Shown one piece after another: positions 1 through 64,000 of a stretch of 64,000 bases of DNA. Within the stretch, counting starts at the first letter, position 1. The number at the start of each line of letters is the position of its first letter. Both the position numbers and the translations under genes were made by a program. The notes beneath the pieces were generated by a model that had not been told where the DNA came from, did not search any database, and saw nothing but the letters and a program-made list of their open reading frames with translations. Source of the stretch: Haliotis cracherodii (Eukaryota); NCBI RefSeq assembly GCF_022045235.1, contig NW_027266292.1:124001-188000 (forward strand), written 5' to 3'.

Positions 1-1221
1 TAGGTTCCATTTTGCACAGTTCTGAATCTGAGAGATTAGATGAGTGAAACAGTCCGGTTCTGGGGGTGGACTGTTTGATAAAATCAGGAGAACCAGCATA
101 TCCACTGTCTGAGAAACTGTTGTCTTCCTTCACAGGGGAAGTGCACACTGTCCGGCTCATGTACGCATGCGCAGCCGGATGTGGAAACTGGGAACTGTGG
201 GAGGGTATTGTTCTCAGTCGCTCATGGCACTGACTTGTGTGTGACGTCACATTATCTGTTGGTGACGTCACGGGCACCTGCTGAATGTGCGTCATACGTC
301 GAGAGATGTGTTTTCTCAGCTGACGGTGTACATTGTCCGACACTCCTGGCAGAGAATGAACATAGGAGAGGATTTCTTCAGCACATTTGGAGAAGCCATG
401 TTGAAATCTGGCTTGAACTGCTTCTTTGACGTGTTTATGTGTGGTGTTGATCTTCCTGACGTTCCTCAGATAATCTACAGTCGTCTCCAAAATCTCGGCC
501 TTCTCCATCTTCTCATAGTTGGGGTCCTGGAAAAACGGATGACGAAATATTATAACGTTGTATGTTATGTATATAGAGAAAAGTATAGATACAAAACAAT
601 AAACGATTTTGAAAACAAAAACAGGTAAATGAGGAATTTTATTTCATTTACCGGTACATTACTTCTCTTCCATTAAAAAGATATAAAAAAATTAATAACC
701 ACTAAAATCAATACATGTCGTATCTAAGGTAATTAAACGACGAACGCTGCCTTTCACACAGTTTAAAAATAGAAAATTGTAATAAATTTAAAATAATATG
801 CTTACGTTTTTTTGCTCTGCCCCACAAACGATGCCCTTGATTTCTGACAGACATTGGTTGATTCTGGCCCGTCGCCGTTTTTCTGCCAACAGTTTTCGAC
901 CCTGAAGAAAAGAATATATCAGCATGAGTATTTTGTTACAGTATATAATTAAATATTATATATACAGGACAATATCGTGTTCCGCAGAATTATAACTAGT
1001 TATTACTGTAAAGGGGACAGATGTGACTTTGGCAAGATGCAAATAGCAGTAGTATTCATGATTAAGTCATTAGCTACGTGAATATGGGAGGGCGTCGATA
1101 TTTGTAAAAGCCCATATATTGACTTTCTGTTCACAGACAGAAACCAAATAAAAACAATGTGTACCTTTCTATATCCAATATATTCCGAGTCGGATTCCGT
1201 GTGTCTATCGAATGATTCCAT
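1..1221 (-). CDS. hes: HES-like bHLH-Orange repressor, copy 1 (3' end beyond the window)
   Basis: complement(join(<1..526,806..901,1165..1221)); GT-AG phase-0 introns. Exon 1 MESFDRHTESDSEYIGYRK, exon 2 GRKLLAEKRRRARINQCLSEIKGIVCGAEQKN, exon 3 DPNYEKMEKAEILETTVDYLR...Orange domain...DSGYAGS...DSELCKMEP, open to the window edge. Confidence 0.9.
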
Positions 1222-1555
1222 CACTGCAATGTGTTCAGCTCTGAGAGACAAGTTAGTGTGATGGAACGCAGCCTCCCGACCCGCCTTTATACCCCCAACA
1301 TTCCCCTACCCACGCTTATCTATGCACAGTTATGTTTTGACATCTGAATAGCCCGGCGCGATCCGATACACGCTGCCAATCAGCGCACGCCTAGCAAAGT
1401 GCCGGCACGCGCCGGCTCCCGTTAAACTTCACCCGGAAGCAGATGTTCTTCTCACGACCCGGCAGGGATGATATTCTTCAGGAGGAGGGAGCATCTTGCT
1501 TGGCGTGACACGAGGAGTTACGTGGCCGAGCACCCGGCCTGTCAACAATCCGCCT
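1222..1555 (-). promoter_or_regulatory. 5' UTR and proximal promoter of HES copy 1
   Basis: TATAAA (1286-1291), CCAAT box near 1376, class-C site GGCACGCGCC 1404-1413, Su(H) site CGTGAGAA 1449-1456, N-box CACGAG 1509-1514. The block is conserved ahead of all seven visible 5' ends. Confidence 0.85.
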
Positions 1556-2882
1556 CAATGTACTGCCATTAATGTGTCTAAATAAAATAGACTCCATGCT
1601 CAAATATTTTTTAACAACTTTCTATTCAGAACGTGTCACGCGCGGCATTGCGTCACATGCGGCCCAGATTCCGATATACCGTTGTATCTTATGAGGACTT
1701 GATACAACTTTGGTCGCTAGCATTATTTTAAAGTAAGGAATATGAAGAAGAATAAACACATATTTTTATTGAGGAATTGTTTGTTTTCAAAATGGCACAA
1801 ATTTCAAACATGTGTGACTATCATATTTGGTTTGTTAAAGAAACAAAATTAATATTCATATGCATTCGGGTATGGTAAATTCACGTGTAGAAGTGCATTT
1901 ATTTACTTATAATTTCTTGGATTATAAAGCAAGTAAGGGCAGCGTGAATTGAAAACCTATAAAACTAAAAATGACGTTGTACCAGTATTTCTGAAGATAA
2001 ATAATATTTATTTTTTAGCCTCTGTCAAAATAATGCAGAATATCCCAGTTAGTATTCGTCAAGAATAAGTGTCTCAGTTCAATATTTAGGGTTCAGATAA
2101 TTAGATACAATTAATATCCTGCTCAATTAAATCTCATTTCACATGTATTTAAAAGTATATATTAAAAAAATAATACCATTTGGATCCCCCCCCCCCCCCC
2201 TTCCAACTTAAGATCGTCGCATAACGTACAGGCATTGGAGTTAATCTCGTTCATTATCAATGTATAAATGTATAAACACTGAAAGATAAGATATACGCAG
2301 ATAAGCTGTCTGTCTGACTCGCAGATCGATAGTGACATCATTATCTTACTTGACATTGCTAATTAATCTTCTTAATGAGTCGCCAGACCGATCAGTGTCA
2401 TGTGGCTGTTAATAGTTGAAAAAATCATGTCTAGACTTCAGCTACCCTGGTAAAATTGGTTAATCTGGATAAACCCATACCAAATATAGAACTATAAGCT
2501 AATTTGGATAAACATCAATGTTTATAATATAACGGAGACAAGTATTTAGGTATCACCTTTGGAAGTCGCCGGAAATCAAGGTCAGTTTATTACAAAACTT
2601 TAAAATATATTAACATTGGGATGATATTATAGAATTATCTAATATATAATTATGTGATACTTGTTTCGTGTGGGCCGTGTGTCTGTGCAACTTAGATTAG
2701 GATACCTCCTTAAATAATCTTACAGAAATGGTATATTAAATTAGTTTTATTTGGGTCACTGTGGTGCTATTTCCAAACGAACACTATGGTTACACATGTT
2801 ATGAATGTAGTGCCATTGTAAATCACATACCATATACGTGTTTTAGGGACTTATATTATATGTGTCTTGTTAATCACACCTG

Positions 2883-3038
2883 NNNNNNNNNNNNNNNNNN
2901 NNNNNNNNNNNNNNNNNNNNNNNNNNNNNNNNNNNNNNNNNNNNNNNNNNNNNNNNNNNNNNNNNNNNNNNNNNNNNNNNNNNNNNNNNNNNNNNNNNNN
3001 NNNNNNNNNNNNNNNNNNNNNNNNNNNNNNNNNNNNNN
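2883..3038. other. Assembly gap
   Basis: Run of N. Confidence 1.
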
Positions 3039-3966
3039 CGTATACACCATGTATTACTGTAGCGTATTACATAAGCTAAATGTTGTCTGTCAGTCAATCC
3101 AGGTATTTGTGGAATAAATATGTTTTAAATTTTATGAAGTTTCCCTCTGATATTAGAACGCAAAAACAAGAACCATTAAACATTTCAATTATCAATTTGA
3201 CTAACATTAAACTTTAACATTTTAGTTTTATAAATTTATAGAAGAAGAAGAAGAAGGAGGAGGAGGTTTTATTTAAATGCCACACAGTTCATTAATGTTT
3301 CGTTCGTTTTCATTTTCATATATTGAGCAGATCCTGTCCGGGCAAATGGCCCATGCGACACTAATTCACAAGTAAAATACAAGTTAAGAGACCTAAACTG
3401 CTAGAATATAGTATATACATTCAATATATTTATATTTCACATTAATGGTAGCTATTTTGACACGTTCACATACTGAATAAAACACATGACAACCCTCACT
3501 GTATGTATACCACTTCACCTTGTAGGTCGCCGGTGACACGGCCAGGTAATTACAATCAAGTACTCAGTAAGTGGCGTCGACGGCCAGAGCTGTTGGTGAC
3601 AAACACGACACCCAGTCAAGTCATAATGAAACTGTTGAGTGGGGTGTCGGGGTGACAGCTTCACCCCAAGGGATATGTCCTGTATAACACACTCGGTCAG
3701 CGCAGGCGCAAAGAAAACGTTTCCAGTCATTAAGCCTGTATCCCTGTTTGTTCAGCTGGGAACAAGCTTCATCTGATGACATTCGTCAAATAAATTGTCT
3801 TTTAAGACCAAACTGCACATTTGATTGTTCATCCTACAGTGCGGACAGAGGTGGACTTACTGTAGTAAATGTGAAAAACACATTGTTAAACACATTTTGG
3901 TTTACTTTCGTTCATTTGTTCTGAAAAAAGCCCCCCTGCAGATCCCGGAGCCTATATTTGTCAGAG

Positions 3967-4131
3967 TGAGTGAGTGAGTATTGTTTTACGCCGCTTTTAG
4001 CAATATTCCAGCAATATCACGGCGGGGGACACCAGAAATGGGCTTCACACATTGTACCCATGTCGGGAATCGAACCCGTGTCTTCGGCGTGACGAGCGAA
4101 CGCTTTAACCACCAGGCTACCCGACCGCCCC
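3967..4131 (-). mobile_element. tRNA-derived SINE, family A
   Basis: Pol III A and B boxes, tRNA-Asp-like head, (ACTC)n tail, 12-bp TSD TATTTGTCAGAG (3955-3966 and 4132-4143). Confidence 0.9.
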
Positions 4132-4229
4132 TATTTGTCAGAGAGAGGCATTGTTTAGTTTTGTCTCAGCCTTTTCTACATGCAAATATAAAACCATTTA
4201 AAAAAATAAAAATATCATGTAGAATGGCC

Positions 4230-4435: not shown

Positions 4436-4660
4436 CTGCCCTTACAACCAGCCCCATTCCATCCCCCATCCCTTTCTCAACCCCTGCCAGCCTAAACTCA
4501 TCTCAGTCTCAGCTCAAGGCCTAATGCTCGAGAGTCCCCTTTTAGATTTTATTTTATTATTTAAACCGTATGCATAACGTCGGGGGTTAATTGGTCTGCT
4601 GTGAAACAAACAAGCCCTTATATGAGCTAGAGTCTGACAATGCTCCAAGGCTGTACTAGA

Positions 4661-4822
4661 GTGAGTGGGTATGGTTTTACGCCGCTTTTAGCAATATTCC
4701 AGCAATATCACGGCGGGGGACACCAGAAATAGGCGCCACACATTGTACCCATGTCGGGAATCGAACCCGAGTCTTCGGCGTGACGAGCGAACGCTTTAAC
4801 CACTAGGCTACCCGACCGCCCT
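4661..4822 (-). mobile_element. tRNA-derived SINE, family A
   Basis: Full-length copy near-identical to 3967-4131. Confidence 0.85.
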
Positions 4823-11770: not shown

Positions 11771-12482
11771 TGTATAGAAGTATATAGGTCCGTGAGTATA
11801 TAAATATGTTCATTTGGACGCATTTAAGCAAATCAGCCCAAATCAGATTTCACAATTCGCTGTGCAGATGTTTCGAAACTGATTCGCACTGATTACGTGC
11901 CTTGGTTTGTTACAACCATACCCGTGCTCGTGTCTTTCACGAAAGTGGTTTATGTCTAACATCTGGCTTTCCCACACTTATATAACACGATATATAACCG
12001 AAATACTGTGCATTAAACAATATTCACTCAGCTTACCATATCATGCCTATCATTAATAGGAAAGGATTTATATTATAATTATTTGGTTTTACATAATATT
12101 GTGTCAATATAATATAAATAATTTAACATAATCTAAGCTTTTAAAATATTCAACGGGGGAACACAAGGAATGGGTCACAGACACTGTACTTATGTTGAAA
12201 ATCGAACCAAGGTTTTAGGCGCAACAGGCTAACACCTTACCTACCAGGCCATACCTCCCCCAGTTTAAATGCAAATACAATCTTCCAACAGTTTACATAG
12301 AGACAAGGCAATAAAACGATATTATATTTAAAGCTTTTATTGTAATCCCGTTATAGGATTTATCACAGTTGTCAATGGCAGCACTCATGTGGTACCAGGG
12401 TTCAGAGATTTGATGATACGATGATAAGAATACATATGTATCTAGATGTTCATCACAAAAACAAGTCCATTTATGAAACAAA

Positions 12483-13887
12483 TCACCACGGCCTCCATGG
12501 AACCTGTTGCTCCGTCTTGATTTGTTGAGAGTAGGACCACGTGCTCTGGAGCCACGCCCTCACTCTCGAGTCATCAAAGTTTTTGTGGATTCTGCTCGAC
12601 TCCATTTTACAAAGTTCTGAATCTGAGAGATTGGATGAGTGATAGTGTCCGGTTCTGGGGGTGGATTGTTTGATAATGTCAGGAGAACCAGCATATCCAC
12701 TGTCTGAAAAACTGTTGTCCTCCGTCACGGGGGAAGTGCACACTGTACTGCTCATGTACGCATGCTCAGCCGGATGTGGATATTGGGAATTGCGGGAAGG
12801 CACTGCGCTCAGTCTCTCATAGCATTGACTTGTGTATGACGTCACATCATCTGTTGATGACGTCACGGGTACCTGTTCAATGTGCGTCATACGTCGGGAT
12901 ATGTGTTTTCTAAGCTGATGGTGTACATTGTCCGACACTCCTGGCAAAGACTGAATGTAGGATAGGACTTCTTCAGCACATTTGGAGAAGCCATGCTGGA
13001 ATCTAGCTTGAACTGCTTCTTTGACGTGTTGATGTGTGGTGTTGATCTTCCTGACGTTCCTCAGATAATCTACAGTCGTCTCCAGAATCTCGGCCTTCTC
13101 CATCTTGTCATAATTTGGGTCCTGTAAAATCGGAAGAAGAAGAATATAAATACATGTTATATATTGTGTAGAGGAGAGATAGCACTTGCGTATCGGTGGA
13201 TATTATTGTGTTTGTTTTGTTTGTTGCTAACTCAGCAATATTCCAGCTTTTTGATGGCGAGTCTGGACCAGACAGTCCAGTGATTGACATCATGAGAATC
13301 GATCCTCGCAACTGGGATCCCGTTAGTCGCCTCTGACGACAAGCATAGTCACTTTTACTTTTACGAAAGCATGGGTTGCTGAATACCTATTCTACCCCGG
13401 ATCTTCACGGGTGTATATGATTGTGAAAAAGTCTGTCCCAGATCACTGAAATGTGACAATACTTACATTTTGTTGTTGCTCTCGACACACGATGTCTTTG
13501 ATTTCTGACAGACTCTGGTTGATTCTGGCTCGTCGCCGTTTTTCAGCCATTAATTTTCGCCCCTGTAAGATAAAGAGATTAATTAATAACAAAATATTTG
13601 TATATGAAATACGGCTGGAAGATGTGCCCTAATTCCATGAAGATAAAAATGTTTCTCAGTAAAGAAGATCGGATTTTTCCCATTTCACCCGAATAGTGCA
13701 TTAGCCACGTGTTTCAAGTAGAATCATACAACAGTTTCAAGGCAAATAATATGACAATGACGACACATTTATTCCCATCAAATTAGTCACGTCCATTTGA
13801 GAATTATTATTTGAGTAATCTAATGCATACCTTTCTTCGGCCCATATATTCACTGTCAGATTCCATGTTATGAAAGTAAGATTCCAT
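12483..13887 (-). CDS. hes: HES-like bHLH-Orange-WRPW repressor, copy 2 (263 aa)
   Basis: complement(join(12483..13121,13467..13562,13831..13887)); exon 2 GRKLMAEKRRRARINQSLSEIKDIVCREQQQN (96 bp); Orange domain ARFQHGFSKCAEEVLSYI; ends WRPW-TGA. Confidence 0.95.
13208..13412 (-). mobile_element. Family B short retroelement in intron 2 of HES copy 2
   Basis: Deleted copy lying within intron 13122-13466. Confidence 0.8.
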
Positions 13888-14220
13888 CACTGCGATGTGT
13901 TCAGCTCTGAGGGACAAGTTAGTGTGATGGAACGCCGCCTCCCGACCCGCCTTTATACCCCCAACATTCCCCTACCCACGCTAATCTATGCACATTTATG
14001 TGTTGACATCTGAATAGCCCGGCGCGATCCGATACATCCAGCCAATCAGCGCACGCTTAGCTAAGTGGTGGCACGCGCCAGCTCGCGTTAAACATCACCC
14101 CGAGACAGATGTTCTTCTCACGACCCGACAGGGATGATATTCTTCAGGTGCAAGGAGCATCTTGCTTGGCGTGACACGAGGAGTTACGAGGACGAGCACC
14201 CGGCCTGTCAACAATCCGCC
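13888..14220 (-). promoter_or_regulatory. 5' UTR and proximal promoter of HES copy 2
   Basis: TATA 13952-13957, CCAAT, class-C site 14070-14079, Su(H) site 14115-14122, N-box. Confidence 0.85.
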
Positions 14221-14504: not shown

Positions 14505-14667
14505 GAGTGAGTGAGTATGTTTTATTCCGCTTTTAGCTATATTCCAGAAATATCACGACAGGGGACACCAGAAATGGGCTTCACATATTGAACCCATGTG
14601 GGGAATCGAACCTAGGTCTTCGGCGTAACGAGCGAACGCTTTAACCACAAGGCTACCCGACGGCCCC
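14505..14667 (-). mobile_element. tRNA-derived SINE, family A
   Basis: 14-bp TSD ATATCGTATAAAAT (14491-14504 and 14668-14681). Confidence 0.9.
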
Positions 14668-17352: not shown

Positions 17353-17422
17353 AATTTTAGCGTTGCTCTGAGCTCCATTTGGACATATGTATCCAAATGG
17401 AGCCCAGAGCAACGCTAAAATT
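17353..17422. repeat. Foldback palindrome
   Basis: 31-bp arms around CATATGTA. Confidence 0.8.
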
Positions 17423-20178: not shown

Positions 20179-21550
20179 TCACCACGGCCTCCATGGAACC
20201 TGTTGCTCCGTCTTGATTTGTTGAGAGTAGGACCACGTGCTCTGCAGCCACGCCCTCACTCTCGAGTCATCAAAGTTTTTGTGGATTCTGCTCGACTCCA
20301 TTTTACAAAGTTCTGAATCTGAGAGATTGGATGAGTGATAGTGTCCGGTTCTGGGGGTGGATTGTTTGATAATGTCAGGAGAACCAGCATATCCACTGTC
20401 TGAGAAACTGTTGTCCTCCTTCACAGGGGAAGTGCACACTGTCCTGTTCATGTACGCATGTGCAGCCGGATGCGAATTTTCGGAATTGTGGGACGGCACT
20501 GCGCTCAGTCTCTCATAGCACTGACTTGTGTATGACGTCACATCATCTGTTGATGGCGTCACGGGCACCTGTTGAATGTGCGTCATACGTCGAGAGATGT
20601 GTTTTCTCAGCTGACGGTGTACATTGTCCGACACTCCTGGCAGAGACTGAATGTAGGAGAGGATTTCTTCAGCACATTTGGAGAAGCCATGATGGAATCT
20701 GGCTTGAACTGCTTCTTTGACGTGTTGTTGATGTGTGGTGTTGATCTTCCTGACATTCCTCAGATAATCTACAGTCGTCTCCAGAATCTCGGCCTTCTCC
20801 ATCTTGTCATAGTTTGGGTCCTGGAACATTGACAATAAATTATGTAATTGAATTATAGTAATATAAAAGACGCGTAAATTTGTTTCAAAATATAGATAGT
20901 TTGAAAATCAAGCCAACGAGGATAAACATACCAATGTCAGAAATAAGTGTTTATATTTCATTATATTTTATATATCAATTAGTGATGACACCAGGTGTTC
21001 GCTAGAAGGTGAGCATATTTTGTGGTTCAGCTATTATCACCAAAACTATCATACGTTTTTTATCCATTGGGTCTATAGAAAAAAAACCATTCGTGAATTC
21101 CATATAATATCCACAAGTAAACTGACATTAAACTGAGATGTAAATACTTAGTTAAATATAAGTAAGAATACTTACATTTTGTTGTTGAACTCCACACACG
21201 ATGCCCTTGATTTCTGACAGACTCTGGTTGATTCTGGCTCGTCGCCGTTTTTCAGCCATTAACTTTCGACCCTGAAAGAAAACCCAGATCAGAATGAAAC
21301 AACGATGTGAATGTAAATGCAATGAAGATCACGACACGGTATTCTATCAAATATAACGACTGGGACACAGTCTATTCCCATTTCTCATGAATATGAAATT
21401 AGCCACGTGCTCGTGGTGTAAACAAGCACATATTATTTACAGGTTGTAAAAAGTGAATTTGAAACTTAATGATATGAGCAAGCTTATGTCTACCTTTCTT
21501 CGGCCCATATATTCACTGCCAGGTTCCGTGTTTTGAAAGTAAGATTCCAT
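20179..21550 (-). CDS. hes: HES-like bHLH-Orange-WRPW repressor, copy 3 (264 aa)
   Basis: complement(join(20179..20820,21176..21271,21494..21550)); GT-AG sites; exon 2 GRKLMAEKRRRARINQSLSEIKGIVCGVQQQN; ends WRPW. Confidence 0.95.
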
Positions 21551-21925
21551 CACTGCGATGTGTTCAGCTCTGAGAGACAAGTTAGTGTGATGGAACGCAG
21601 CCTCCCGACCCGCCTTTATACCCCTAACATTCCCCTACCCACGCTAATCTATGCACAGTTACGTTTTGACATCTGAATAGCCCGGCGCGATCCGATACAC
21701 GCAGCCAATCAGCGCACGCCTAGCGTAAGTGGTGGCACGCGCCGGCTCTCGTTAAACTTCACCCGGAGACAGATGTTCTTCTCACGACCCGACAGGGATG
21801 ATCTGCTTCAGGAGCAGGGAGCATCTTGCTTGGCGTGACACGAGGCCTAACCGAAATGAACACCCGGCCTGTCAACAATCTGCCTGTCAACAATTTAGTG
21901 TTTCATTCAATCAATTTTCCCACCT
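21551..21925 (-). promoter_or_regulatory. 5' UTR and proximal promoter of HES copy 3
   Basis: TATA 21615-21620, CCAAT, class-C site 21734-21743, Su(H) site 21779-21786, N-box, second GTGGGAA core at 21917-21923. Confidence 0.85.
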
Positions 21926-22634
21926 ATTTGGATTGAGTGTGACACTCGCAAAGTCGCATTCGTCGTTTAACGTTACGTGAAGTTTCATTTATTATATATA
22001 CAAAAAATATTTCAGTTTGACTGAAACAGTCTTATCATAATTTAAAACGTTATTTGTCACGTATTAGCAACAATCTTAAATGTTATTGCTTTTAAGTGTT
22101 TGTTTTCAATGTCAGACCCATTCTTGAAAAAGAATAAGGTAACCACTAGGTCTCGTTGGTCGGTTTCCACTTTATTTGCTTTCTTATTTTCAGTGAACAA
22201 GCTAATAACTGAATATTACCAACGGAAATATCACAATCGCGTGTAGACATAATCCGTATTAATCCACTTTTGATGCCGTCGTGTAGATGGCGTTGACGGA
22301 CGTATAAGACGGTCACGTGTTTCTTTGTGAACATGTGTAATGACATTTAAACTTTAATTTCACTGATTGAGGGAAAAATACAGGGTTTTTTCTCAGCCCT
22401 GATATGTGTCTTCCAAGACCCAATATATTTTATACTCAAAACAGCGAAATGTTAATATATGTACAGTGGTGTATAAAGTCAATATTTAATGTATCACTAT
22501 AATGTACAGATGCTGTTTAAAGTGTGTCTAAGCATTCAACGTATATATTATTACTATAAAGTCTCTCATAATTCCTTGGCGAATGGGTCAAATATTGTAA
22601 TGTATTTGTGTATGTTTCATATTTGTGAAGGTGA

Positions 22635-27851: not shown

Positions 27852-29154
27852 TTACCAGGGCCTCCACGGAACCTGTTGCTCCGTCTGAATCTGTTGTGAG
27901 TAGGACCACGTGCTCTGGAGCCACGCTCTCACTCTCGAGTCTTTGTCAACCATTTCTGATGGTATTTTACATCTTAGTTCTGAATACGAGAGGCTGGGGA
28001 GATAGTGTCCGGTTCTGGGGGTGGATTGTTTGACACTATCAGGAGAACCAGCATATCCACTGTCTGAGAAACTATTTTCCTCCTTCACAGGGGAAGTGCA
28101 CACTGTCCTGTTCATGTACGCATGCGCAGCCGGATGTTGATATTGGACATTGTGGGAGGGTAATGTTCTCAGTCGCTCGAAGCACTGACTTGTGTATGAC
28201 GTCACATCATCTGTTGATGATGTCATGGGCACCTGCTGAATGTGCGTCATGCGCCCACAGATGTGTTTTCTCAGCTGACGGTGTACATTGTCCGACACTC
28301 CTGGCAGAGACTGAATGTAGGAGAGGATTTCTTCAGCACATTTGGAGAAGCCATGATGGAATCTAGCTTCAACTGCTTCTTTGACGTGTTGATGTGTGGT
28401 GTTGATCTTCCTGACGTTCCTCAGATAATCTACAGTCGTCTCCAGAATCTCGGCCTTTTCCATCTTGTCATAGTTTGGGTCCTGGAAAAATGAATGACAA
28501 TAAATAACATGCATCGTGATATGTAAGAAATTATTTTTAAAAACAAGAAAGATATTATTTCAGTCTTTAATTTGAAATAGGAGTAAATTTGCAAGAATGT
28601 GAATATAGATTGTAAACATCGAAGGGAGCTACTTACATTTCGTTTATGTGCCGCACACACGATGCTTTTGATTGTCGACAGGCTTTGGTTGATTCTGGCT
28701 CGTCGCCGTTTTTCAGCCATTATCTTTCGACCCTGGAGAAAAAAACAGATTCATATGAAATGTATTCATGTTTGCATACAATATTTCAGGTTATCAAAAT
28801 ATATGTTCTGAAAGAACGCTTCGCTTGACTCTAGTCTCTGAAATGAACATATCCTACAGAAAACAGTTGTTAAATTATCTTAATAAAAATATAATAAATA
28901 GACCAGAGACTCTCTTCATCCTGGTACTGCAGTAATCTAGACTTGCCAATTATTATTGAGAAAGGGACAAACAGTCTATTCCCATTTCTTATGAATATTA
29001 AATTAGCCACGTGTTTCAGTCATGAACAAGCACATGTAATTTACACATTATAAACAGACCATTTGAAACTTTTTTATAAGAGTAAATTGATGCTTACCTT
29101 TCTTAGGCCCATATATTCACTGTCAGATTCCATGTTATCAAAGTAAGATTCCAT
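27852..29154 (-). CDS. hes: HES-like bHLH-Orange-WRPW repressor, copy 4 (260 aa)
   Basis: complement(join(27852..28481,28637..28732,29098..29154)); exon 2 GRKIMAEKRRRARINQSLSTIKSIVCAAHKRN; ends WRPW-TAA. Confidence 0.95.
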
Positions 29155-29530
29155 CACTGAGATGTGTTCAGCTCTTAAGGGACAAGTTGGTGTGATGGAA
29201 AGCAGCCTCCCGACCCGCCTTTATACCCCTAACATTCCCCTACCCACGCTAATCTATGCACAGTTATGTTTTGACATCTGAATAGCCCGGCGCGATCCGA
29301 TACACGCAGCCAATCAGCGCACACCTAGTTAAGTGGTGGCACGCGCCGGCTCGCGTTAAACTTCACCCTGAGACAGATGTTCTTCTCAGAGCCGACAGGG
29401 ATGATATTCTTCAGGAGCAGAGAGCATCTTGCTCAGCGTGACACGAGGAGTTACGTGGCTGAGCACCCGGCCTGTCAACAATCTGAGTAATTTTGATCCA
29501 GTGTTTCATTCAATTAAAGTGTATTCCCAC
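29155..29530 (-). promoter_or_regulatory. 5' UTR and proximal promoter of HES copy 4
   Basis: TATA 29220-29225, CCAAT, class-C site 29338-29347; proximal Su(H) site mutated (TTCTCAGA 29383-29390); distal GTGGGAA core at 29524-29530. Confidence 0.85.
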
Positions 29531-35427: not shown

Positions 35428-36738
35428 TTACCAGGGCCTCCATGGAACCTGTTGCTCCGTCTTAATCTGCTGTGAGTAGGACCACGTGCTCTGGAGCCAC
35501 GATCTCACTCTCGAGTCTTTGTCAACAATTTCTGACGGTACGTTACAACTAAGTTCTGAATCTGAGAGACTGGGGTGATAGTGTCCGGTTCTGGGGGTGG
35601 ATTGTTTGACACTATCAGGAGAACCAGCATATCCACTGTCTGAGAAACTGTTGTCCTCCTTCACAGGGGAAGTGCAAACTGTCCGGCTCATGTACGCATG
35701 TGCAGCCGGATGTGGATATTTGGAATTATGAGAAGGTATTGTTCTCAGTCGCTCGGAGCACTGACTTGTGTATGACGTCACATCATCTGTTGATGACGTC
35801 TCGGGCACCTGTTGAATGTGCGTCAAACGTCGAGATATGTGTTTTCTCAGCTGATGGTGCACATTGTCCGACACTCCTGGCAGAGACTGAATGTAGGAGA
35901 GGATTTCTTCAGCACATTTGGAGAAGCCATGATGGAATCTGGCTTGAACTGCTTCTTTGACGTGTTGATGTGTTGTGTTGATCTTCCTGACGTTCCTCAG
36001 ATAATCTACAGTCGTCTCCAGAATCTCGGCCTTTTCCATCTTGTCATAGTTTGGGTCCTGGAAAAAATGAATAACAATAAATAACCAAGGCATACATCGT
36101 GATATATAAGAAATTATTTTTTTAAAAAAGAAAGATATTATTTCAGTCTTAAATTTGAAATAGGAGTAAATTTGCAAGAATGTGAATATAGATTGTAAAC
36201 ATCAAAGGGAGCTACTTACATTTCGTTTATGTGCCGCACACACGATGCTTTTGATTGTCGACAGGCTTTGGTTGATTCTGGCTCGTCGCCGTTTTTCAGC
36301 CATTATCTTTCGACCCTGGAGAAAAAAACAGATTCATATGAAATGTATTCATGTTTGCATACAATATTTCAGGTTATCAAAATATATGTCCTGAAAGAAC
36401 GCTTCGCTTGACTCTAGTCTTTGAAATGAACATATCCTACAGAAAACAGTTGTTAAATTATCTTAATAAAAATATAATAAAAAGACCAGAGACTCTCTTC
36501 ATCCTGGTACTGCAGTAATCTAGACTTGCCAATTATTATTGAGAAAGGGACAAACAGTCTATTCCCATTCCTTATGAATATTAAATTAGCCACATGTTTC
36601 AGTCATGAACAAGCACATGTAATTTACACATTATAAACAGACCATTTGAAACTTTTTTTATAAGAGTAAATTGATGCTTACCTTTCTTCGGCCCATATAT
36701 TCACTGTCAGATTCCATGTTATGAAAGTAAGATTCCAT
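35428..36738 (-). CDS. hes: HES-like bHLH-Orange-WRPW repressor, copy 5 (260 aa)
   Basis: complement(join(35428..36057,36220..36315,36682..36738)); GT-AG sites; ends WRPW-TAA. Confidence 0.95.
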
Positions 36739-43213: not shown

Positions 43214-43682
43214 TTCTTGTCTTCCGTCAACTTCTAAGTAATTCCTATCAAACAATGAAATATTTAATTGTGTATCTGTATCTACATGTCTGAACAAACC
43301 ACGTGTTTGTGGTTAAAACAAACTGTTGTGGGATAAAGTGTTTCAGATGCTCATTGTCAGGATTTGTTTTCCTTCTGATAGGTGACGCCAGAACAGAGGA
43401 TAATAATATTTTACTACTTAACTTGTATTTTTTTATGGATCGACAGCTAGCAGACCTGATTTCTTGGAAAACTATTCTACCCAAGGTGCACTAGTACATA
43501 CACCAGTATATCATGCTTAGAATAGGCACATCATGAATTCGTAAAAAACAACGAAGGATACAAGAGTTAAATAATACATCTTTATCAACAATTATAATTT
43601 ATCACAGACAGTGTATATGAAAAGACCGATATAAAGAAGCACCATTATGACGTGTCCAAAATATAAAGTTGCATGGAGCATT

Positions 43683-44962
43683 TTACCAAGGCCTCCATGG
43701 AACCTGTTGCTCCGTCTTAATCTGCTGTGAGTAGGACCACGTGCTCTGGAGCCACGATCTCACTCTCAAGTCTTTGTCAACCATATCTGACGGTACTTTA
43801 CAACTAAGTTCTGAATCTGAGAGACTGGGGTGATAGTGTCCGGTTCTGGGGGTGGACTGTTTGACACTATCAGGAGAACCAGCATATCCACTGTCTGAGA
43901 AACTCTTGTCCTCCTTCACAGGGGAAATGCACACTGTCCGGCTCATGTACGCATGTGCAGCCGGATGTTGATATTTGGAATTGTGGGAAGATATTGTTCT
44001 CAGTCGCTCGGAGCACTGACTTGTGTATGACGACACATCATCTGTTGATGGCGTCTCGGGCACCTGCTGAATGTGCGTCATACGTCGAGAGATGTGTTTT
44101 CTCAGCTGATGGTGTACATTGTCCGACACTCCTGGTAGAGACTGAATGTAGGAGAGGATTTCTTCAGCACATTTGGAGAAGCCATGGTGGAATCTGGCTT
44201 GAACTGCTTCTTTGACGTGTTGATGTGTAGTGTTGATCTTCCTGACATTCCTCAGATAATCTACAGTCGTCTCCAGAATCTCGGCCTTCTCCATCTTGTC
44301 ATAGTTTGGGTCCTGGAAAAATGAATAACAATAAATAATCAAGGCATACACCGTAATATATAAGAAACTTTTTTAAAAAAAGAAGAAGATATTAAATTTG
44401 ATATAGGAGTAAACTTGGCTGAGAAATTGTATATTTTAAAACACGTAACTTGTGTTGCAAATGCAAAAGAAATAGATATAATTTATTTTTTTAATAGGAA
44501 AAATCTTGGGTATCTAGGGTAAATAGATGGTGAACATGGATTGTAATCAAAGGGAGCTACTTACATTTCGTTGATGTGCCGCACACACGATGCTTTTGAT
44601 TGTTGACAGGCTTTGGTTGATTCTGGCTCGTCGTCGTTTTTCTGCCATCATCTTTCGGCCCTGGAGAAAAAAAATAGATTGATGTGAAATTCCTTCATAT
44701 TTGCATACGATATTTCAGAATATCAAAATATAAGTTTTGAAAGAACCCTTAAATAGCGTGTTGAGAAAAGGGACAAACACAGTCTATTCCCATTTCTCAT
44801 GCATATTAAATTAGCCACGTGTTTTAAATGTAAACAAGCACATGTTAATTATAAGTTGTAAACAGTCCATTTGAAAGTTATTTTTAAGAGTAAACTAATG
44901 CCTACCTTTCTTCGGCCCATATATTCACTGTCAGATTCCATGTTATCAAAGTAAGATTCCAT
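43683..44962 (-). CDS. hes: HES-like bHLH-Orange-WRPW repressor, copy 6 (260 aa)
   Basis: complement(join(43683..44312,44565..44660,44906..44962)); exon 2 GRKMMAEKRRRARINQSLSTIKSIVCAAHQRN; ends WRPW-TAA. Confidence 0.95.
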
Positions 44963-45245
44963 CACTGCGATGTGTTCAGGTCTGAGAGGCAAGTTATTGT
45001 GATGGAACGCAGACTTTCGACCCGCCTTTATACCCCCAACATTCCCCTACCCACGCTAATCTATGTACAGTTATGTTTTGACATCTGAATAGCCCGGCGC
45101 GATCCGATACACACAGCCAATCAGCGCACGCCTAGTTAAGTGGTGGCACGCGCCGGCTCTCGTTAAACTTCACCCGGAGACAGATATTCATCTTGCTTGG
45201 CGTGACACGAAGAGTCACGTGGACAAGCACCCGGCCTGTCAACAG
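44963..45245 (-). promoter_or_regulatory. 5' UTR and proximal promoter of HES copy 6
   Basis: TATA 45027-45032, CCAAT, class-C site 45145-45154; an internal deletion near 45188 removes the Su(H) site; N-box changed to CACGAA. Confidence 0.85.
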
Positions 45246-45824
45246 TCTCATTATTATCTAGTGTTTGATTCAATAAAGGTTTATTTCCATCTATTTAGGG
45301 CACGCTATGTCGCCTTCAGTTACCTGGGTGCGGTGTCAAGTGCTTGATGACGATGATTGCATTTACAAGAGATTTCCATCTTCTACTGACGATGTGTCAT
45401 GTAAATATAAGACTCTGATTGTTTAATCTTTTGCATTTGTATGTAATCAGATTCGATCACAATGGCATATATAACGAATTTAATTCCAACGACAACTTTG
45501 TCCGAAAACTAAAATTTTATCATCTATATGAAACTGCTGTTAACTGATTAGGGAACGGCCCTTTAATATTCTGGGGGGGTTCTTCTTATTTTCTTAAGAG
45601 ATACAGTATGTCAAGTTTATTCAAAATATATTTGTTCGCTGGACGCTGCTTCGAAAGAATTATGAGAAATTAATTGTACCCCTCGCCTCTCCTCCCCTCT
45701 CCTCTCCAGTGTGAAAACAACCAATTGAAATTTAAAACAGACAGCCGTTTTAGCTAATGTGACTTTAGACTAAAGTTGCCTTTCAACAATAATAAATATT
45801 TCAGCAAGGTCACGACAGGGGAGA

Positions 45825-45990
45825 GGGGCGGTGGGGTAGCCTAGTGGTTAAAGCGTTCGCTCGTCACGCCGAAGACCCGGGTTCGATTCCCGACATGGGT
45901 ACAATGTGTGGAGCCCATTTCTGGTGTCTCCCGCCGTGATATTGCTGGAGTATTGCTAAAAGCGGCGTAAAACCATACTCACTCACTCTC
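45825..45990 (+). mobile_element. tRNA-derived SINE, family A, nested in an older antisense copy
   Basis: 15-bp TSD TCACGACAGGGGAGA (45810-45824 and 45991-46005). Confidence 0.9.
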
Positions 45991-47169
45991 TCACGACAGG
46001 GGAGACCAGAATTGGGCCTCACACACTGTACTCATTTACGAACGCTTCAACCACTATGCCAACCCATATTCCTGAGTGAGTTGAGTTTAAGGTTTTACTG
46101 AAAACCAGTTCTTTTGTACTCTTCACCTCTCTTCCAACAACATCTGTAAAAACGAATTGTAAACGCATGACAGGTTTTAAATTTTGTATTATGTATATTT
46201 GTATAATTCAGTAGGAAATAACAAATGCAAATACACAATGCATGTGAAAGGTAGCAATATTTTATTGTATCCAAATTTTGTAATATTCAGTATTTTAGTT
46301 TAAATATTATACAATATTCCATATTGATATATGCGTATTGTTTTTATCAGACGTTTTAAATGTTTTTCACATTGTTTGTGTTTGTCAATATTTTCTTTAT
46401 CCGAACGAAAACTAAAATGTCTTCACTCAGTACCGCAAACTCTAGACGCTTATTAAATCTCCATCCTCCTCAATGGATAACACAACAAGAAGATGTCTGG
46501 TGCCACTAGAATCATGGTACCATAATAATGTGGGTTCTTTTTCTTTGCGACAATAAGCTTAAGATCTCGTAAGACGGTAGCACAGGTCAATAACAACACA
46601 GGTCTTGTTTAACAGTGTGAATCAACATTTAAGGTGATGTTATGTTCCTGTGTTTTCATATTCACGGATTAATTTACTGCATGAATTATCCTCCCATTCA
46701 CATATACTTTGCATTGTTTGTTTAATAAAATGCCAGACATGTACTATGGCGGGAGAGAGAAATGTACACCCAAAGCACCATGAATCAATCTCTCTGGATC
46801 TCTCTGTATATTGACATTGTCTGTCCCAGAGCCTGGAGAATATTTCAATGAGGAATCCAACTCAAGTCTAGAATAAGTTGTCAAGTCTAGATTGCCTTAG
46901 CTGAAATTAACCATTGTTCTGGGCTCCATTTAAATTTTACTTTTTTTATTTTGCGGGTGTATATTTCTAAAAGAGATGACTTTATTTCTAGGACTAAGTG
47001 TTAGTCTATGGCACTGATTGTAGGTTTTGGAAAAATGTAATCTTGTTTAGTTTCATAATCCTCTATCTAAATCATCCAAGTCTATTGCGATCTCGTTTTA
47101 GATAGGTGGACAATATAATAAGTGATTACAGCTTTATGATTACATGTCGCCTCACGTTTTCGTTCTGGC

Positions 47170-47321
47170 NNNNNNNNNNNNNNNNNNNNNNNNNNNNNNN
47201 NNNNNNNNNNNNNNNNNNNNNNNNNNNNNNNNNNNNNNNNNNNNNNNNNNNNNNNNNNNNNNNNNNNNNNNNNNNNNNNNNNNNNNNNNNNNNNNNNNNN
47301 NNNNNNNNNNNNNNNNNNNNN
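47170..47321. other. Assembly gap
   Basis: Run of N. Confidence 1.
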
Positions 47322-47631
47322 TGCGATTTCCGACTGCAAGCGTATGTCGCACACGGGCCCGTGCAGGCCATCTAATGTGTTTCCGAAAAGGGGAAAAGTG
47401 AGTTTGTGCAACCCAGGAGGGGGGCTTTAGGGGTTGCTTATATAGTAATTTTGAAATTTGGAATGAATGCCAAGAGTGGGTGGATGAATAATGAGGATAA
47501 ATATTAATGCGATGTTAAATAAGGTGCCATTGCTGAAACTACATGGCATACTAACTTACTCTTTCTCAACTCTTTCTCAATCATTTCGGCTGTCTCAGCA
47601 TCTTGTCAATTTTATGTTGGTACTTTCGCAC

Positions 47632-47990
47632 CCAGACATTATTATGATAACAGTTTGGTGTCAAATAATCACCCGCATTGTCTGATAATTACAATCAGTT
47701 GCCCAATAACTAGTTGCTGAAAGGCCAGGTCGTTAGTGTCAGTTGCCGGTCATAAGGAAACCGTTAATTAATCCGATAGGGGGCGCCACCTTCTCTACAA
47801 GCAGCGGGGATCTGCACGTGGTGGCATTCTGATGCACGAGGTCGTAGTGTCCAGCAGATGGTTCTTGCCATGTCCGGAGTGTTGACTGGACAATCAGTTA
47901 TTCCACGTGACAAAACCGATTGTTTTCAACACGGTGTCAACGTCATGAAATAATTCATCAAAGTGACTGGACATCTTGTGAAACATTCCA
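47632..47990 (+). promoter_or_regulatory. Conserved non-coding element C/D, C type, upstream of copy 6
   Basis: Reverse complement of about 32970-33342. Confidence 0.5.
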
Positions 47991-48184
47991 TTCGACAGGT
48001 GGCAATGTGTGAGTGAGTGAGTTTCAAATAGTATCTAGTGTTCAAATATTCAAAACTGTCCGCCAATATTTAGGGTTTCTGAAGGGAATATTTCACATTA
48101 TGAAGCATTAACCTTTTGTGGGAGGTTAACGTGACAATACAAAACGGAGGCATGGTATCTGTGTAATTAGGATACTAATATATA

Positions 48185-61740: not shown

Positions 61741-62826
61741 CACTGGCAGTTGGAGATAATGTTTATCACAAGGATGCCAGTGGACTAGATGAACTTTAAT
61801 TGTCCTATTAATTCAGAGACGCTGTAAAATGCAAAGGTTCATTTAAAAGACATTAGGAGACACGTTTTATAACCTGTAGCGTAGTTATCGCTGTTATCTG
61901 TTGGAGGCCCCAGGACATGTATTTAATAAAATAGATCGCACCCAACCCATCCTCATCAACTTCGCAGCTCCAGCAGCCCATACTCATACCCAGCTTCAAG
62001 GATTTAAATAACTAAGAGACTTGAGAGTTCCTTCCACTTGAAAATTGATTTGACCAAAAAGATACAAACATTATCAAACGTTACCAGGGTGAAACCAGTC
62101 ATCGAAACACTGCGAACTTCCAAAACACAACTATGATACCCGTATCAAATACATCAGCATCAAATAACAATTTCTTGTAGTTTAATCTTTAGCCACCATC
62201 AAACATGGTTGGGTGTTTTCTTTTGTACGGCAGTTTAGCACTATGCACATGTTTTATCTATTCAACTTTATGCACAACTTAAATTTGGGAACTACATGTT
62301 AATCTATTGCCTGAAGTAGTGTCATATCCAAGTTCAGACATTTGATGAAAAAGCCAATTCCCAGTCCCAAACAGCTTGCTCTAAGGTTCCGTCATGGCAT
62401 TCAGTTATAAACCAGATGAATTGAGTAACAAAAGAAGCTTTACCCCACATCTGAGATTTTATAATATGTTTGAAATGCTTTTATTTTTAAAATAAAATAT
62501 GATTTCAAATTTTATTTTTTCCTTATAACACACAACTGCCAATGAGTATCTTGTTATTGAGAATCAATTCGGCACAAATTTACAAGATTTTAACATTCTT
62601 TACCCCCGACTTTATTGAACCAATCTATTTTTACATAAAAAAATACCAATCCACAAATGACCTTTTTTGCAAACTGTTGCAGAAGTGAGAGATGGTTAAA
62701 TAGTCAATAAATCAAATTTAGCAACAATTTCAGTTACATCATACAAACTCGGTATGGCCTTCAGTTTACCTACGTCCAGTGCTACAGTGCTACACACGTC
62801 TACGTCGAGACAGGTGAAAGGAATGA

Positions 62827-63092
62827 GTGAGTTGGGCTTATCGCCGCTTTTAACAGTATTCCAGTTATTTCACGGCGTTTCAGCTTAATGTGGGAGGAAA
62901 GCCCGAAGTGATGCAGACGTTTACCACTTCGATGAAACCCACGGTCACGGGTATGGTGCTGACAAACCTAGAAACATAAACGGGGCGAACCGGGATTCGA
63001 ACCCACAATCATAGGTTTCTGGCGTGCCCAAGGGACGCAACTTTGCACAGCGAATCGCGGCGCCTTAGACGACTGGGCCACCCGTGCCCCCC
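62827..63092 (-). mobile_element. tRNA-derived SINE, family D
   Basis: Head TGGCCCAGTCGTCTAAGGCG...GGTTCGAATCCC; same 3' tail as family A; 12-bp TSD TGAAAGGAATGA (62815-62826 and 63093-63104). Confidence 0.8.
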
Positions 63093-63538
63093 TGAAAGGA
63101 ATGATCTTATGGACTTTGAATAATAATATTTCTTCTAAATGCGATAAACTTCAACCAGACAATCATACGCTTTCCCCTTCGGTGCCATCTCTGGCAGTGA
63201 AAACAGAACAATGGAATTTGATAACTGATATCACATCTCAAAACAAACACAGCGCGAGGTAGTACGTGGCAATTATTACACACCCTGGAATATTATCTAA
63301 AAACATACACCTACAAAATAAATGGAACCCAGAGCTGACTCAATCTCGACTTTATTCTAAACTTTAGTTGGAATCCTTTTTAGCGTATTCTCCGGGGTCT
63401 AACAGACCTACTGCCTCATTCTGCGTGTAAGGCTTCGACACAATATAGATTGAGAACAAAGGCGAAGAATTTGTTGGTCAGATTTATTCATGTATCACAG
63501 ATAAAAAATGATGGACTATTCAGATTCAGCAACAATCA

Positions 63539-64000
63539 TCACCACGGCCTCCATGGAACCTGTTGCTCCGTCTTGATTTGTTGAGAGTAGGACCACGTGC
63601 TCTGCAGCCACGCCCTCACTCTCGAGTCATCAAAGTTTTTGTGGATTCTGCTCGACTCCATTTTACAAAGTTCTGAATCTGAGAGATTGGATGAGTGATA
63701 GTGTCCGGTTCTGGGGATGGATTGTTTGATAATGTCAGGAGAACCAGCATATCCACTGTCTGAAAAACTGTTGTCCTCCTTCACAGGGGAAGTGCTCATG
63801 TACGCATGCGCAGCCGGATGCGGATATTGGGAATTGCGGGAAGGCACTGCGCTCAGTCTCTCATAGCATTGACTTGTGTATGACGTCACATCATCTGTTG
63901 ATGACGTCACGGGCACCTGTTGAATGTGCGTCATACGTCGAGAGATGTGTTTTCTCAGCTGACGGTGTACATTGTCCGACACCCCTGGTAGAGACTGAAT
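63539..64000 (-). CDS. hes: HES-like repressor, copy 8 (3' part of the last exon only)
   Basis: Open frame from the window edge to WRPW-TGA; near-identical to exon 3 of copies 2, 3 and 7, with a 12-bp in-frame deletion (YMSTSPVK). Confidence 0.9.
   Translation of the reverse strand: MQSLPGVSDNVHRQLRKHISRRMTHIQQVPVTSSTDDVTSYTSQCYERLSAVPSRNSQYPHPAAHAYMSTSPVKEDNSFSDSGYAGSPDIIKQSIPRTGHYHSSNLSDSELCKMESSRIHKNFDDSRVRAWLQSTWSYSQQIKTEQQVPWRPW

What the first reader, a model, noticed from the sequence alone, without database searches (positions are those of the whole stretch)
1..64000. Tandem array of at least 8 intact HES genes forming an E(spl)-complex-like cluster
Seen: eight co-oriented bHLH-Orange genes (WRPW visible in seven) fill the window, with no frameshift or stop and only in-frame indels. 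The units share a promoter, enhancer-like blocks and 3' UTR motifs. Known: the Drosophila E(spl) complex is a cluster of Notch-effector HES genes with Su(H) sites, proneural E-boxes and K/Brd boxes, and lineage-specific Hes expansions occur in other animals. Inference: this is an independently built, recently homogenised cluster in a probable mollusc that uses the same regulatory logic. Unlike the mostly intronless fly E(spl) genes, it keeps two introns at positions matching vertebrate Hes1 introns 1 and 2.
Basis: partly seen in the sequence, partly recalled or inferred. Interest (0 to 1): 0.85.

Follow-up and report, generated by a model that had tools for sequence, protein, structure and literature searches.

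The report
Abalone tandem array of eight HES genes
The window holds a real tandem array of eight intact HES-type repressor genes of the black abalone; the genes are already in public annotation, such lineage-specific clusters are common, and the fly-like regulatory logic is only partly there.

Summary
Observation confirmed. Eight co-oriented (minus-strand) bHLH-Orange-WRPW genes lie 7.6-12.6 kb apart. Six are complete in the window; A and H are cut by its ends but complete in the genome. All have GT-AG introns and no internal stops. Both assembly gaps are intergenic.

The genome is Haliotis cracherodii. Seven of my models equal public (RefSeq/UniRef) proteins exactly; H was matched only by length and contig. 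Whole-genome searches find exactly eight copies.

- The array was built independently of fly E(spl)-C. It expands a gastropod-wide HES subfamily that lacks the basic-region proline. That subfamily also expanded separately in Patella.
- It is not recently homogenised. Paralogue Ks is 0.11-0.49, introns are about 71-73% identical, and six copies pair 1:1 with H. rufescens genes. Only gene E is young, a D/F chimera from unequal crossing-over.
- Gene H has lost intron 1.

Regulatory motifs:
- A K box (CTGTGATA, miR-2 seed match) sits in 7 of 8 3'UTRs, and the genome has a mir-71/mir-2 cluster.
- A Hairy-type site GGCACGCGCC sits in the near-invariant promoter of seven copies; its CACGCG core is in all eight.
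- A single CSL site occurs in 5 of 8 promoters; none are paired.
- Proneural E-boxes are at background. One Brd box was found, and no GY box.

Expression could not be tested. This is a new member of a known kind, of moderate interest.

The parts
1..1221 (-). Gene A (public protein P0067, 274 aa). Exons 1221-1165, 901-806 and 526-1; exon 3 continues 145 nt beyond the window start and ends WRPW.
12483..13887 (-). Gene B (P0061, 263 aa). Exons 13887-13831, 13562-13467 and 13121-12483.
20179..21550 (-). Gene C (P0063, 264 aa). Exons 21550-21494, 21271-21176 and 20820-20179.
27852..29154 (-). Gene D (XP_071116298.1, 260 aa). Exons 29154-29098, 28732-28637 and 28481-27852.
35428..36738 (-). Gene E (XP_071116286.1, 260 aa). 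Exons 36738-36682, 36315-36220 and 36057-35428. It is a chimera: D-like from -700 to about 35,950, F-like from there to about 35,130.
43683..44962 (-). Gene F (XP_071116285.1, 260 aa). Exons 44962-44906, 44660-44565 and 44312-43683.
53091..54581 (-). Gene G (XP_071116287.1, 262 aa). Exons 54581-54525, 54250-54158 (93 nt, one codon shorter) and 53729-53091.
63539..64000 (-). Gene H, exon-3 tail only in the window. The full gene reaches window 64493 (257 aa; taken to be P0065 by length and contig). It has two exons only, because intron 1 was lost precisely.
29155..29490 (-). Representative shared promoter and 5'UTR block (gene D): TATAAAGG, inverted CCAAT (ATTGG) and a class-C site. The homologous blocks lie upstream of every ATG. 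The -230..-1 stretch averages 93% pairwise identity.
1404..1413 (+). Hairy/E(spl)-type class-C site GGCACGCGCC, with its CACGCG core about 190 nt upstream of the ATG. Other copies: 14070-14079, 21734-21743, 29338-29347, 36921-36930, 45145-45154 and 54764-54773. H has the CACGCG core at -190 outside the window, inside a one-base variant of the 10-mer.
   Evidence: (7 found, 0.04 expected)
1449..1456 (-). Single canonical CSL/Su(H) site CGTGAGAA at -235. Other copies: 14115-14122 (B), 21779-21786 (C), 36966-36973 (E), and H outside the window. It is mutated in D and G and deleted in F.
12361..12368 (-). K box CTGTGATA (8-mer match to the miR-2 family seed), 29-115 nt after the stop codon. Other copies: 27760-27767 (D), 35345-35352 (E), 43600-43607 (F), 53055-53062 (G), 63493-63500 (H). 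A has one outside the window. C has CTGTGGTA.
2883..3038 (.). Assembly gap in the A-B spacer. It is intergenic and was not filled.
47170..47321 (.). Assembly gap in the F-G spacer. It is intergenic and was not filled.

Best explanation
This is a genuine, functional tandem array of eight paralogous genes in the black abalone, Haliotis cracherodii. They encode bHLH-Orange-WRPW repressors of a divergent, gastropod-wide HES subfamily whose basic region lacks the usual proline.

Origin (shown): the array grew by tandem duplication after the Haliotis lineage split from Gigantopelta and Patella, but before the living Haliotis species diverged. It still changes by unequal crossing-over: gene E is a D/F recombinant. 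It also changes by intron loss (gene H). Purifying selection keeps both the proteins and a compact promoter of about 230-330 bp.

Mechanism (inferred from motifs):
- Each gene is transcribed from its own TATA/CCAAT promoter.
- Each is repressed by HES proteins, itself or its neighbours, through a conserved class-C site: GGCACGCGCC in seven copies, the CACGCG core in all eight.
- Each is damped after transcription by miR-2-family microRNAs through a K box in a short 3'UTR.
- The proteins recruit Groucho through WRPW.

Notch input through the single CSL site in five of the eight promoters is possible but weakly supported.
For: Gene models and identity:
- Models are intact and A-G are identical to public proteins.
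- Pfam finds HLH and Hairy_orange.
- There are exactly eight copies genome-wide.

Selection:
- Ka/Ks is 0.19-0.40 for all pairs, with Ks 0.11-0.49.
- Ks is alike in bHLH-Orange (0.27) and the C-terminal half (0.30), so the conservation reflects selection, not conversion.
- The promoter averages 93% identity against about 71-73% for introns.

History:
- Six copies pair 1:1 with H. rufescens genes. A and H have orthologues in four Haliotis species.
- The proline-less gastropod clade has 100/99 support. Haliotis and Patella expansions are separate.
- E is a chimera with a breakpoint near 35,950. The D and E units are 94-97.7% identical over the whole unit.

Motifs:
- Class-C 10-mer: 7 found in the window against 0.04 expected. 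The CACGCG core is at -190 in all eight.
- The K box is the most widely shared 8-mer in 3'UTRs that are otherwise about 50% identical. All 10 window matches are on the gene strand, against 2.8 expected on both strands.
- The genome encodes mir-71 plus four mir-2 hairpins above the Rfam cut-off, with six TATCACAGCC seeds.
Against:
- Motif conservation among paralogues is not independent evidence, and no cross-species DNA could be fetched.
- The basic region differs from canonical HES, so binding to the class-C site is assumed.
- C carries a variant K box downstream of a possible early poly(A) signal.
- F and G have no CSL site.
- The two assembly gaps leave the exact spacer content unknown.
Confidence: 0.8

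Rival explanations
1. One reading: an E(spl)-complex-like battery of direct Notch effectors. Each gene would be driven by Su(H) sites together with proneural E-boxes, and limited by K and Brd boxes.
For: - A canonical CGTGAGAA site lies at the same promoter position in A, B, C, E and H. Extra GTGGGAA cores lie at -375 in C, D and E.
- A K box is present in 7 of 8 3'UTRs.
- The genes encode tandem WRPW repressors.
Against: - YGTGRGAA is not enriched in the window: 13 found against 8.6 expected.
- There is no paired Su(H) site, and F and G have no site.
- CAGSTG E-boxes are at background and not conserved in position.
- There is one Brd box (gene B) and no GY box.
- No non-HES genes were found in the spacers.
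- Canonical HES genes elsewhere in the genome carry three canonical CSL sites each, so they look like the likelier primary Notch targets.
Confidence: 0.3
2. Concerted evolution: the copies look alike because recent gene conversion homogenised an older array.
For: - E is a D/F mosaic.
- The D and E units are 94-97.7% identical, and exon 2 of D and E is identical.
- The core promoter is 88-97% identical in all pairs.
Against: - Ks is 0.11-0.49.
- Introns differ in length (155-428 nt) and are about 71-73% identical.
- Outside D/E/F the 3'UTRs are about 50% identical.
- Species labels are not clustered on the tree. Copies pair with orthologues instead.
- Ks is equal in conserved and variable protein regions.
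Confidence: 0.08
3. Assembly artefact: uncollapsed haplotypes or a mis-assembled repeat inflate the number of copies.
For: Two assembly gaps lie in the array. The contig is a 2.58-Mb scaffold.
Against: - Copies differ by 2-14% at the protein level (Ka) and by up to Ks 0.49, and they have different introns and spacers.
- H. rufescens has 7, H. asinina 7 and H. rubra 6 related proteins, each set on one contig.
- The gap flanks hold no gene-body sequence.
Confidence: 0.03

Closest known systems
Lineage-specific tandem Hes clusters of lophotrochozoans (Bao, Xu and Shimeld 2017, PMC5381572; Gazave et al. 2014, PMC4172395)
   Same: These are tandem, mostly co-oriented Hes paralogues produced by independent duplications. 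They were reported in gastropod, bivalve, brachiopod and annelid genomes. The two bHLH introns are conserved.
   Different: Gazave et al. report clusters of two to six genes; this one has eight. All its members belong to one divergent proline-less subfamily and lack the third intron. No paper found in my searches describes the Haliotis array itself; the genes exist only as automatic RefSeq models.
[quoted passage not shown]
   Same: Both have seven to eight tandem bHLH-Orange-WRPW repressor genes and a K box (miR-2 family seed match) in the 3'UTRs. The K-box family is described in PMC4238352 and PMC1043860.
   Different: The origin is independent: E(spl)-C expanded within arthropods and flies (PMC3261227), and this array sits in a gastropod clade. 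It has no Bearded-family or other interspersed genes, no paired Su(H) sites, and no enrichment of proneural E-boxes. It has one Brd box and no GY box. Introns are retained, and the basic-region proline is absent.
Canonical HES genes of the same genome (C14, C15 and C16 loci)
   Same: They share the 96-nt exon 2 with phase-0 borders, the Orange domain and the WRPW end.
   Different: The canonical genes keep KPxxEK(K/R)RRARIN, score 43-66 bits on the Orange model against 29-37 for the array, and carry three canonical CSL sites in about 600 bp. Most lack a K box near the stop codon.
Patella caerulea SNE40_015608/10/13/16 and the single-copy proline-less HES of Gigantopelta and heterobranch snails
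   Same: They share the subfamily signature RKG(R/K)KLLAEK(K/R)RR.RIN, KMEKAEILE and a WRPW end.
   Different: Patella expanded separately (own clade, 100/100). Heterobranch members are 410-500 aa, have no Pfam Orange hit, and were seen in one or two copies among the proteins the search returned.

Membership tests
HES (Hairy/Enhancer-of-split) bHLH-Orange family | bHLH domain of the group E type | tested here: met
   Exon 2 matches Pfam HLH at 23.5 bits (cut-off 20.7), covering the basic region and helix 1. Exon 3 matches HLH positions 34-51, which is helix 2.
HES (Hairy/Enhancer-of-split) bHLH-Orange family | Orange domain after the bHLH | tested here: met
   Pfam Hairy_orange scores 26.9-33.8 bits (cut-off 25.3) for D, B and G. 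All eight copies pass the cut-off in the genome scan.
HES (Hairy/Enhancer-of-split) bHLH-Orange family | C-terminal WRPW (Groucho-binding) tetrapeptide | tested here: met
   WRPW followed by a stop occurs in all eight copies: seven in the window and A just outside it.
HES (Hairy/Enhancer-of-split) bHLH-Orange family | Proline in the basic region (KPxxEKRRRARIN) | tested here: not met
   All eight copies have (G/D)RK(L/I/M)(L/M/I)AEKRRRARIN. Canonical HES genes of the same genome keep the proline. The loss is shared with Gigantopelta, Patella and heterobranch homologues. The genes are therefore filed as a divergent HES subfamily, not as canonical Hairy/E(spl).
HES (Hairy/Enhancer-of-split) bHLH-Orange family | Ancestral intron positions: before the basic region and in the loop, both phase 0 | tested here: met
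   Exon 2 is 96 nt (93 in G) with phase-0 borders, as in three canonical HES genes of this genome. This agrees with PMC3396596 (phases 0-0-1) and PMC4172395. H has lost intron 1. All eight lack the third intron.
E(spl)-complex-type Notch effector cluster | Paired Su(H)/CSL sites (SPS) or multiple high-affinity CSL sites in each promoter | tested here: not met
   There is one CGTGAGAA in 5 of 8 promoters, no inverted pair, and none in F or G. The window is not enriched. The control canonical HES genes have three sites each.
E(spl)-complex-type Notch effector cluster | Proneural E-boxes next to the Su(H) sites | tested here: not met
   CAGSTG occurs at 1.02 per kb upstream against 1.08 per kb in the window, and its positions are not conserved.
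E(spl)-complex-type Notch effector cluster | K, Brd and GY boxes in the 3'UTRs | tested here: inconclusive
   The K box is present in 7 of 8 copies and is the top shared 8-mer. The Brd box occurs only in B, and there is no GY box.
E(spl)-complex-type Notch effector cluster | Interspersed Bearded-family genes and a linked groucho gene | tested here: not met
   No spacer ORF of 80 aa or more has a Pfam domain. Small intron-containing genes could have been missed.
E(spl)-complex-type Notch effector cluster | Transcription depends on Notch signalling | not testable with these tools
The test needs inhibitor or knock-down experiments.
E(spl)-complex-type Notch effector cluster | Orthology with arthropod E(spl) bHLH genes | tested here: not met
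   The array nests in a gastropod-only clade, apart from the insect hairy and other canonical HES proteins sampled. No fly E(spl) sequence was available to include.

The most novel reading that the evidence does not exclude
Repression of tandem HES repressor genes by miR-2-family microRNAs through a K box is shared between fly E(spl)-C and an independently expanded gastropod HES array. Either this microRNA-HES link dates back to the protostome ancestor, or it was recruited twice. In the abalone array it is paired with an invariant HES-binding site in every promoter. That combination would give a short-lived, self-limiting burst or oscillator circuit built on a proline-less HES variant.
Probability: 0.3. 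Interest if true: 0.6.

Novelty: new member of a known kind. Interest (0 to 1): 0.35.

Why it matters
Tandem Hes expansions recur across animals, and it is unclear why this family duplicates so readily. It is also unclear whether the copies keep common control. This array is large, clean and fully intact, and it has dated events: a chimeric gene, an intron loss, and orthologues in four species. Two control elements have survived while the surrounding DNA decayed.

That makes it a good natural experiment for three questions:
- Whether microRNA and auto-repressive control of HES genes is ancient or convergent.
- What a proline-less HES basic region binds.
- Which HES genes actually read Notch in molluscs.

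It does not change the current picture, because such clusters are documented and these genes are already annotated.

Tried and rejected
Only protein-level orthology was possible.
- Paired Su(H) sites, proneural E-box enrichment, and Brd and GY boxes: searched, and either not found or found at background.
- The CGTGGGTA next to the TATA box is invariant but misses the CSL core, so I did not count it.
- Hidden extra copies: neither the exon-3 search nor the Orange-domain search found any on C29 or elsewhere. Flanks 40 kb to the left and 30 kb to the right hold repeats and unrelated ORFs.
- Other genes inside the spacers: no Pfam hit.
- Conserved plus-strand ORFs over exon 3 (for example 20460-20720 and 35700-35960) are antisense shadows of the coding exon, not genes.
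- Assembly artefact and genome-wide concerted evolution: rejected.
Searches used exon references or public protein ids. Exons were joined only inside my own scripts, for translation, Ka/Ks and comparison with returned proteins.
- The N gaps were not filled.


Full report
**What is there**

The minus strand carries seven WRPW-stop ends, seven RRRARIN basic regions and seven EKAEILE helix-2 motifs at regular spacing. I read one unit and carried its exons to the others. That gave three-exon models for A-G:
- exon 1 is 57 nt;
- exon 2 is 96 nt (93 nt in G);
- exon 3 is 630-642 nt in B-G and 672 nt in A;
- all introns are GT-AG, there are no internal stops, and the length differences are in frame.

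Pfam places exon 2 in HLH (basic region and helix 1; 23.5 bits, cut-off 20.7). It places exon 3 in HLH helix 2 and in Hairy_orange above the cut-off.

The two genes cut by the window ends are complete in the genome:
- A's exon 3 runs 145 nt past the window start and ends WRPW.
- H starts at window 64493.

There are therefore eight genes, all on the minus strand, with stop codons 7.6-12.6 kb apart. Searches used exon references or public protein ids.

**Assembly gaps**

The N runs at 2883-3038 and 47170-47321 lie in the A-B and F-G spacers. They are 1.66 kb and 2.2 kb upstream of the nearest ATG, outside the conserved promoter block. Their flanks match only dispersed short repeats and one inverted spacer block, never a gene body. 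No reading frame crosses a gap. I did not fill them, so the true spacer length there is unknown.

**Whose genome, and how many copies**

Exon 3 of gene D is 100% identical to 'transcription factor HES-7.1-A-like [Haliotis cracherodii]'. That protein sits on a contig of 2,576,853 bp, which is the length of the window's contig C29. Models A-G equal public proteins residue for residue. H corresponds by length and contig to the 257-aa H. cracherodii entry P0065; I did not compare it residue by residue.

An exon-3 search of the whole 1.18-Gb assembly finds these eight loci and two distant HES genes. A Hairy_orange HMM search finds 18 loci: the eight here and ten elsewhere, on C14 (three), C15 (two), C16 (two), C1, C20 and C56. 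'At least eight' is therefore exactly eight. Spacer ORFs have no Pfam domain, and the flanks hold repeats and unrelated ORFs.

**History of the array**

I built a tree of the eight proteins with 20 homologues from H. rufescens, H. rubra and H. asinina, using Gigantopelta as outgroup.
- A, B, C, D, G and H each pair with one H. rufescens gene.
- A and H have orthologues in all four Haliotis species.
- Species labels are no more clustered than in shuffles.
- Only E and F are sisters within H. cracherodii.

Other measures point the same way:
- Pairwise Ks is 0.11-0.49 and Ka/Ks is 0.19-0.40.
- Ks is the same in the near-invariant bHLH-Orange part (0.27) and in the variable C-terminal half (0.30). 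The protein conservation therefore reflects selection, not conversion.
- Introns differ in length (155-428 nt) and are about 71-73% identical in aligned columns.

This excludes recent homogenisation of the array as a whole.

Local turnover is real, however. The D and E units are 94-97.7% identical over the whole 7.6-kb unit. A sliding comparison shows E to be D-like (96-100% in all but one 100-column window) from -700 to the start of exon 3. From there it is F-like (94-99%) through the rest of exon 3 and the proximal 3'UTR, to about 35,230. The order F-E-D and the near-identical spacers on both sides are what one unequal crossover between F and D would leave. H. rufescens has seven genes, which fits.

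H has precisely lost intron 1, so its exons 1 and 2 are fused in frame.

**Which kind of HES**

All eight copies read (G/D)RK(L/I/M)(L/M/I)AEKRRRARIN where canonical HES genes have KPxxEKRRRARIN. Canonical HES genes of the same genome keep the proline, and they share the same 96-nt exon 2.

The proline-less signature, together with KMEKAEILE and WRPW, also occurs in:
- Gigantopelta;
- four genes of Patella caerulea with near-consecutive locus tags;
- many heterobranch snails.

In a tree with canonical HES and hairy proteins these form one clade (100/99) on a long branch. Within it the Haliotis copies (97/96) and the Patella copies (100/100) are separate expansions. The array is thus an independent expansion of a gastropod-wide divergent HES subfamily.

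The retained introns are phase 0 and 0, as published for HES1-type genes (0-0-1; PMC3396596). They also fit the two homologous bHLH introns of annelid Hes genes (PMC4172395). The third intron is missing in all eight.

**Shared control elements: promoter**

The last 230 nt before each ATG average 93% pairwise identity (minimum 88%). That is far above introns and silent sites. The block holds TATAAAGG, an inverted CCAAT box and GGCACGCGCC.
- GGCACGCGCC is found 7 times in the window against 0.04 expected.
- Its CACGCG core lies at -190 in all eight copies.
- H carries a one-base variant of the 10-mer.
- From my own knowledge, CACGCG is the class-C site preferred by Hairy/E(spl) proteins. Auto-repression or cross-repression is therefore the likeliest role. 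This step is inferred.

A canonical CSL site, CGTGAGAA, sits at -235 in A, B, C, E and H. It is mutated in D and G and deleted in F.
- Cores at -375 occur in C, D and E.
- There is no inverted pair.
- YGTGRGAA is not enriched in the window: 13 found against 8.6 expected.
- CAGSTG E-boxes are at background and not conserved in position.
- As a control, three canonical HES genes of this genome each carry three canonical CSL sites. In two of them the sites lie within about 600 bp upstream of the bHLH exon. In the third, one site lies there and two lie about 2 kb further upstream.

**Shared control elements: 3'UTR**

CTGTGATA lies 29-115 nt after the stop codon in 7 of 8 genes, and C has CTGTGGTA. 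It is the most widely shared 8-mer; the next best is shared by only four copies. Outside D/E/F the 3'UTRs are about 50% identical.
- All ten window matches are on the gene strand, against 2.8 expected on both strands.
- In the six intact copies that have a canonical poly(A) signal within 700 nt, the K box lies upstream of the first one. E has no such signal in that span.
- This 8-mer is the K box, the complement of the miR-2-family seed (PMC4238352, PMC1043860).
- The genome encodes mir-71 and four mir-2 hairpins above the Rfam cut-off, with six TATCACAGCC seeds in 1.2 kb.
- There is one Brd box (gene B) and no GY box.
- Among the other HES genes only two have K-box cores near the stop codon.

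The 'enhancer-like blocks' are collinear remnants shared by the C, D and E spacers. Their 80-84% identity is what Ks of about 0.23 predicts.

**Comparison with what is known**

Independent tandem Hes duplications are reported in almost every metazoan phylum (PMC4172395). Hes clusters are documented in gastropods, bivalves, brachiopods and annelids (PMC5381572), and Hes expansion in lophotrochozoans is noted in PMC8166818. My two literature searches found no description of the Haliotis array. The genes exist as automatic RefSeq models under assorted 'E(spl)-like' and 'HES-like' names.

The array resembles fly E(spl)-C in gene number, protein type and the K box. It differs in these respects:
- origin;
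- absence of interspersed genes;
- absence of paired Su(H) sites;
- no E-box enrichment;
- only one Brd box and no GY box;
- retained introns;
- the missing basic-region proline.

**Limits**

Motif conservation therefore rests on paralogues only.

**Verdict**

This is a new member of a known kind, of moderate interest. The K box and class-C site pair is the most testable new point.

Noticed in passing
window 3964-4132, 4658-4821, 14505-14667, 22633-22797, 45824-45992, 51363-51530, 56478-56647, 57494-57658: A dispersed repeat of about 165-170 bp occurs in both orientations at 88-96% identity. Three copies score just above the Rfam tRNA cut-off, but ARAGORN calls no tRNA. It is most likely a tRNA-derived SINE that peppers the spacers.
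   Followed up: partly
G000:C2:13773730-13775165 (L015:1045-2480, minus strand): This is the canonical protostome mir-71/mir-2 cluster. It has one mir-71 and four mir-2 hairpins above the Rfam cut-off, and six TATCACAGCC seeds.
   Followed up: yes
G000:C14:5787054-5922735; C15:9769278-9806945; C16:2386315-2478809: Three further loose groups of canonical, proline-bearing HES genes lie elsewhere in the genome. Each gene checked has three canonical CSL sites upstream. In two of them a CGTGGGAA lies about 55 bp before a TATA box. These look like the likelier primary Notch targets.
   Followed up: partly
window 47491-48024 vs 40709-40178 and 33474-32943: Just right of the second assembly gap lies an inverted copy (about 91-92% identity) of a block from the D-E and E-F spacers. 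This suggests a local inversion or rearrangement at the edge of the D-E-F duplication zone.
   Followed up: no
L011:1-3600 (G000:C29:104001-107600): A long tandem repeat stays open in three frames ('PTTKPYHQ...' units), 16 kb beyond gene A. It could be a satellite or a proline/threonine-rich repetitive exon.
   Followed up: no
proteins P0037, P0042, P0046, P0051 (Patella caerulea SNE40_015608/10/13/16): A second, independent tandem expansion of the same proline-less HES subfamily exists in a limpet. Its proteins are short (180-218 aa).
   Followed up: partly
window 20460-20720, 35700-35960, 43955-44215, 53384-53632 (+ strand): Recurrent ORFs of 82-86 aa lie antisense to exon 3. They are conserved only because they mirror the coding exon and are not separate genes.
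   Followed up: yes
all eight proteins, C-terminal half (e.g. gene D, window 27852-28100): Two motifs outside the known domains, NSFSDSGYAGSPD and SRVRAWLQSTW, are conserved in all copies and recognisable in Gigantopelta. Their function is unknown; they could be phosphorylation or degradation signals.
   Followed up: no
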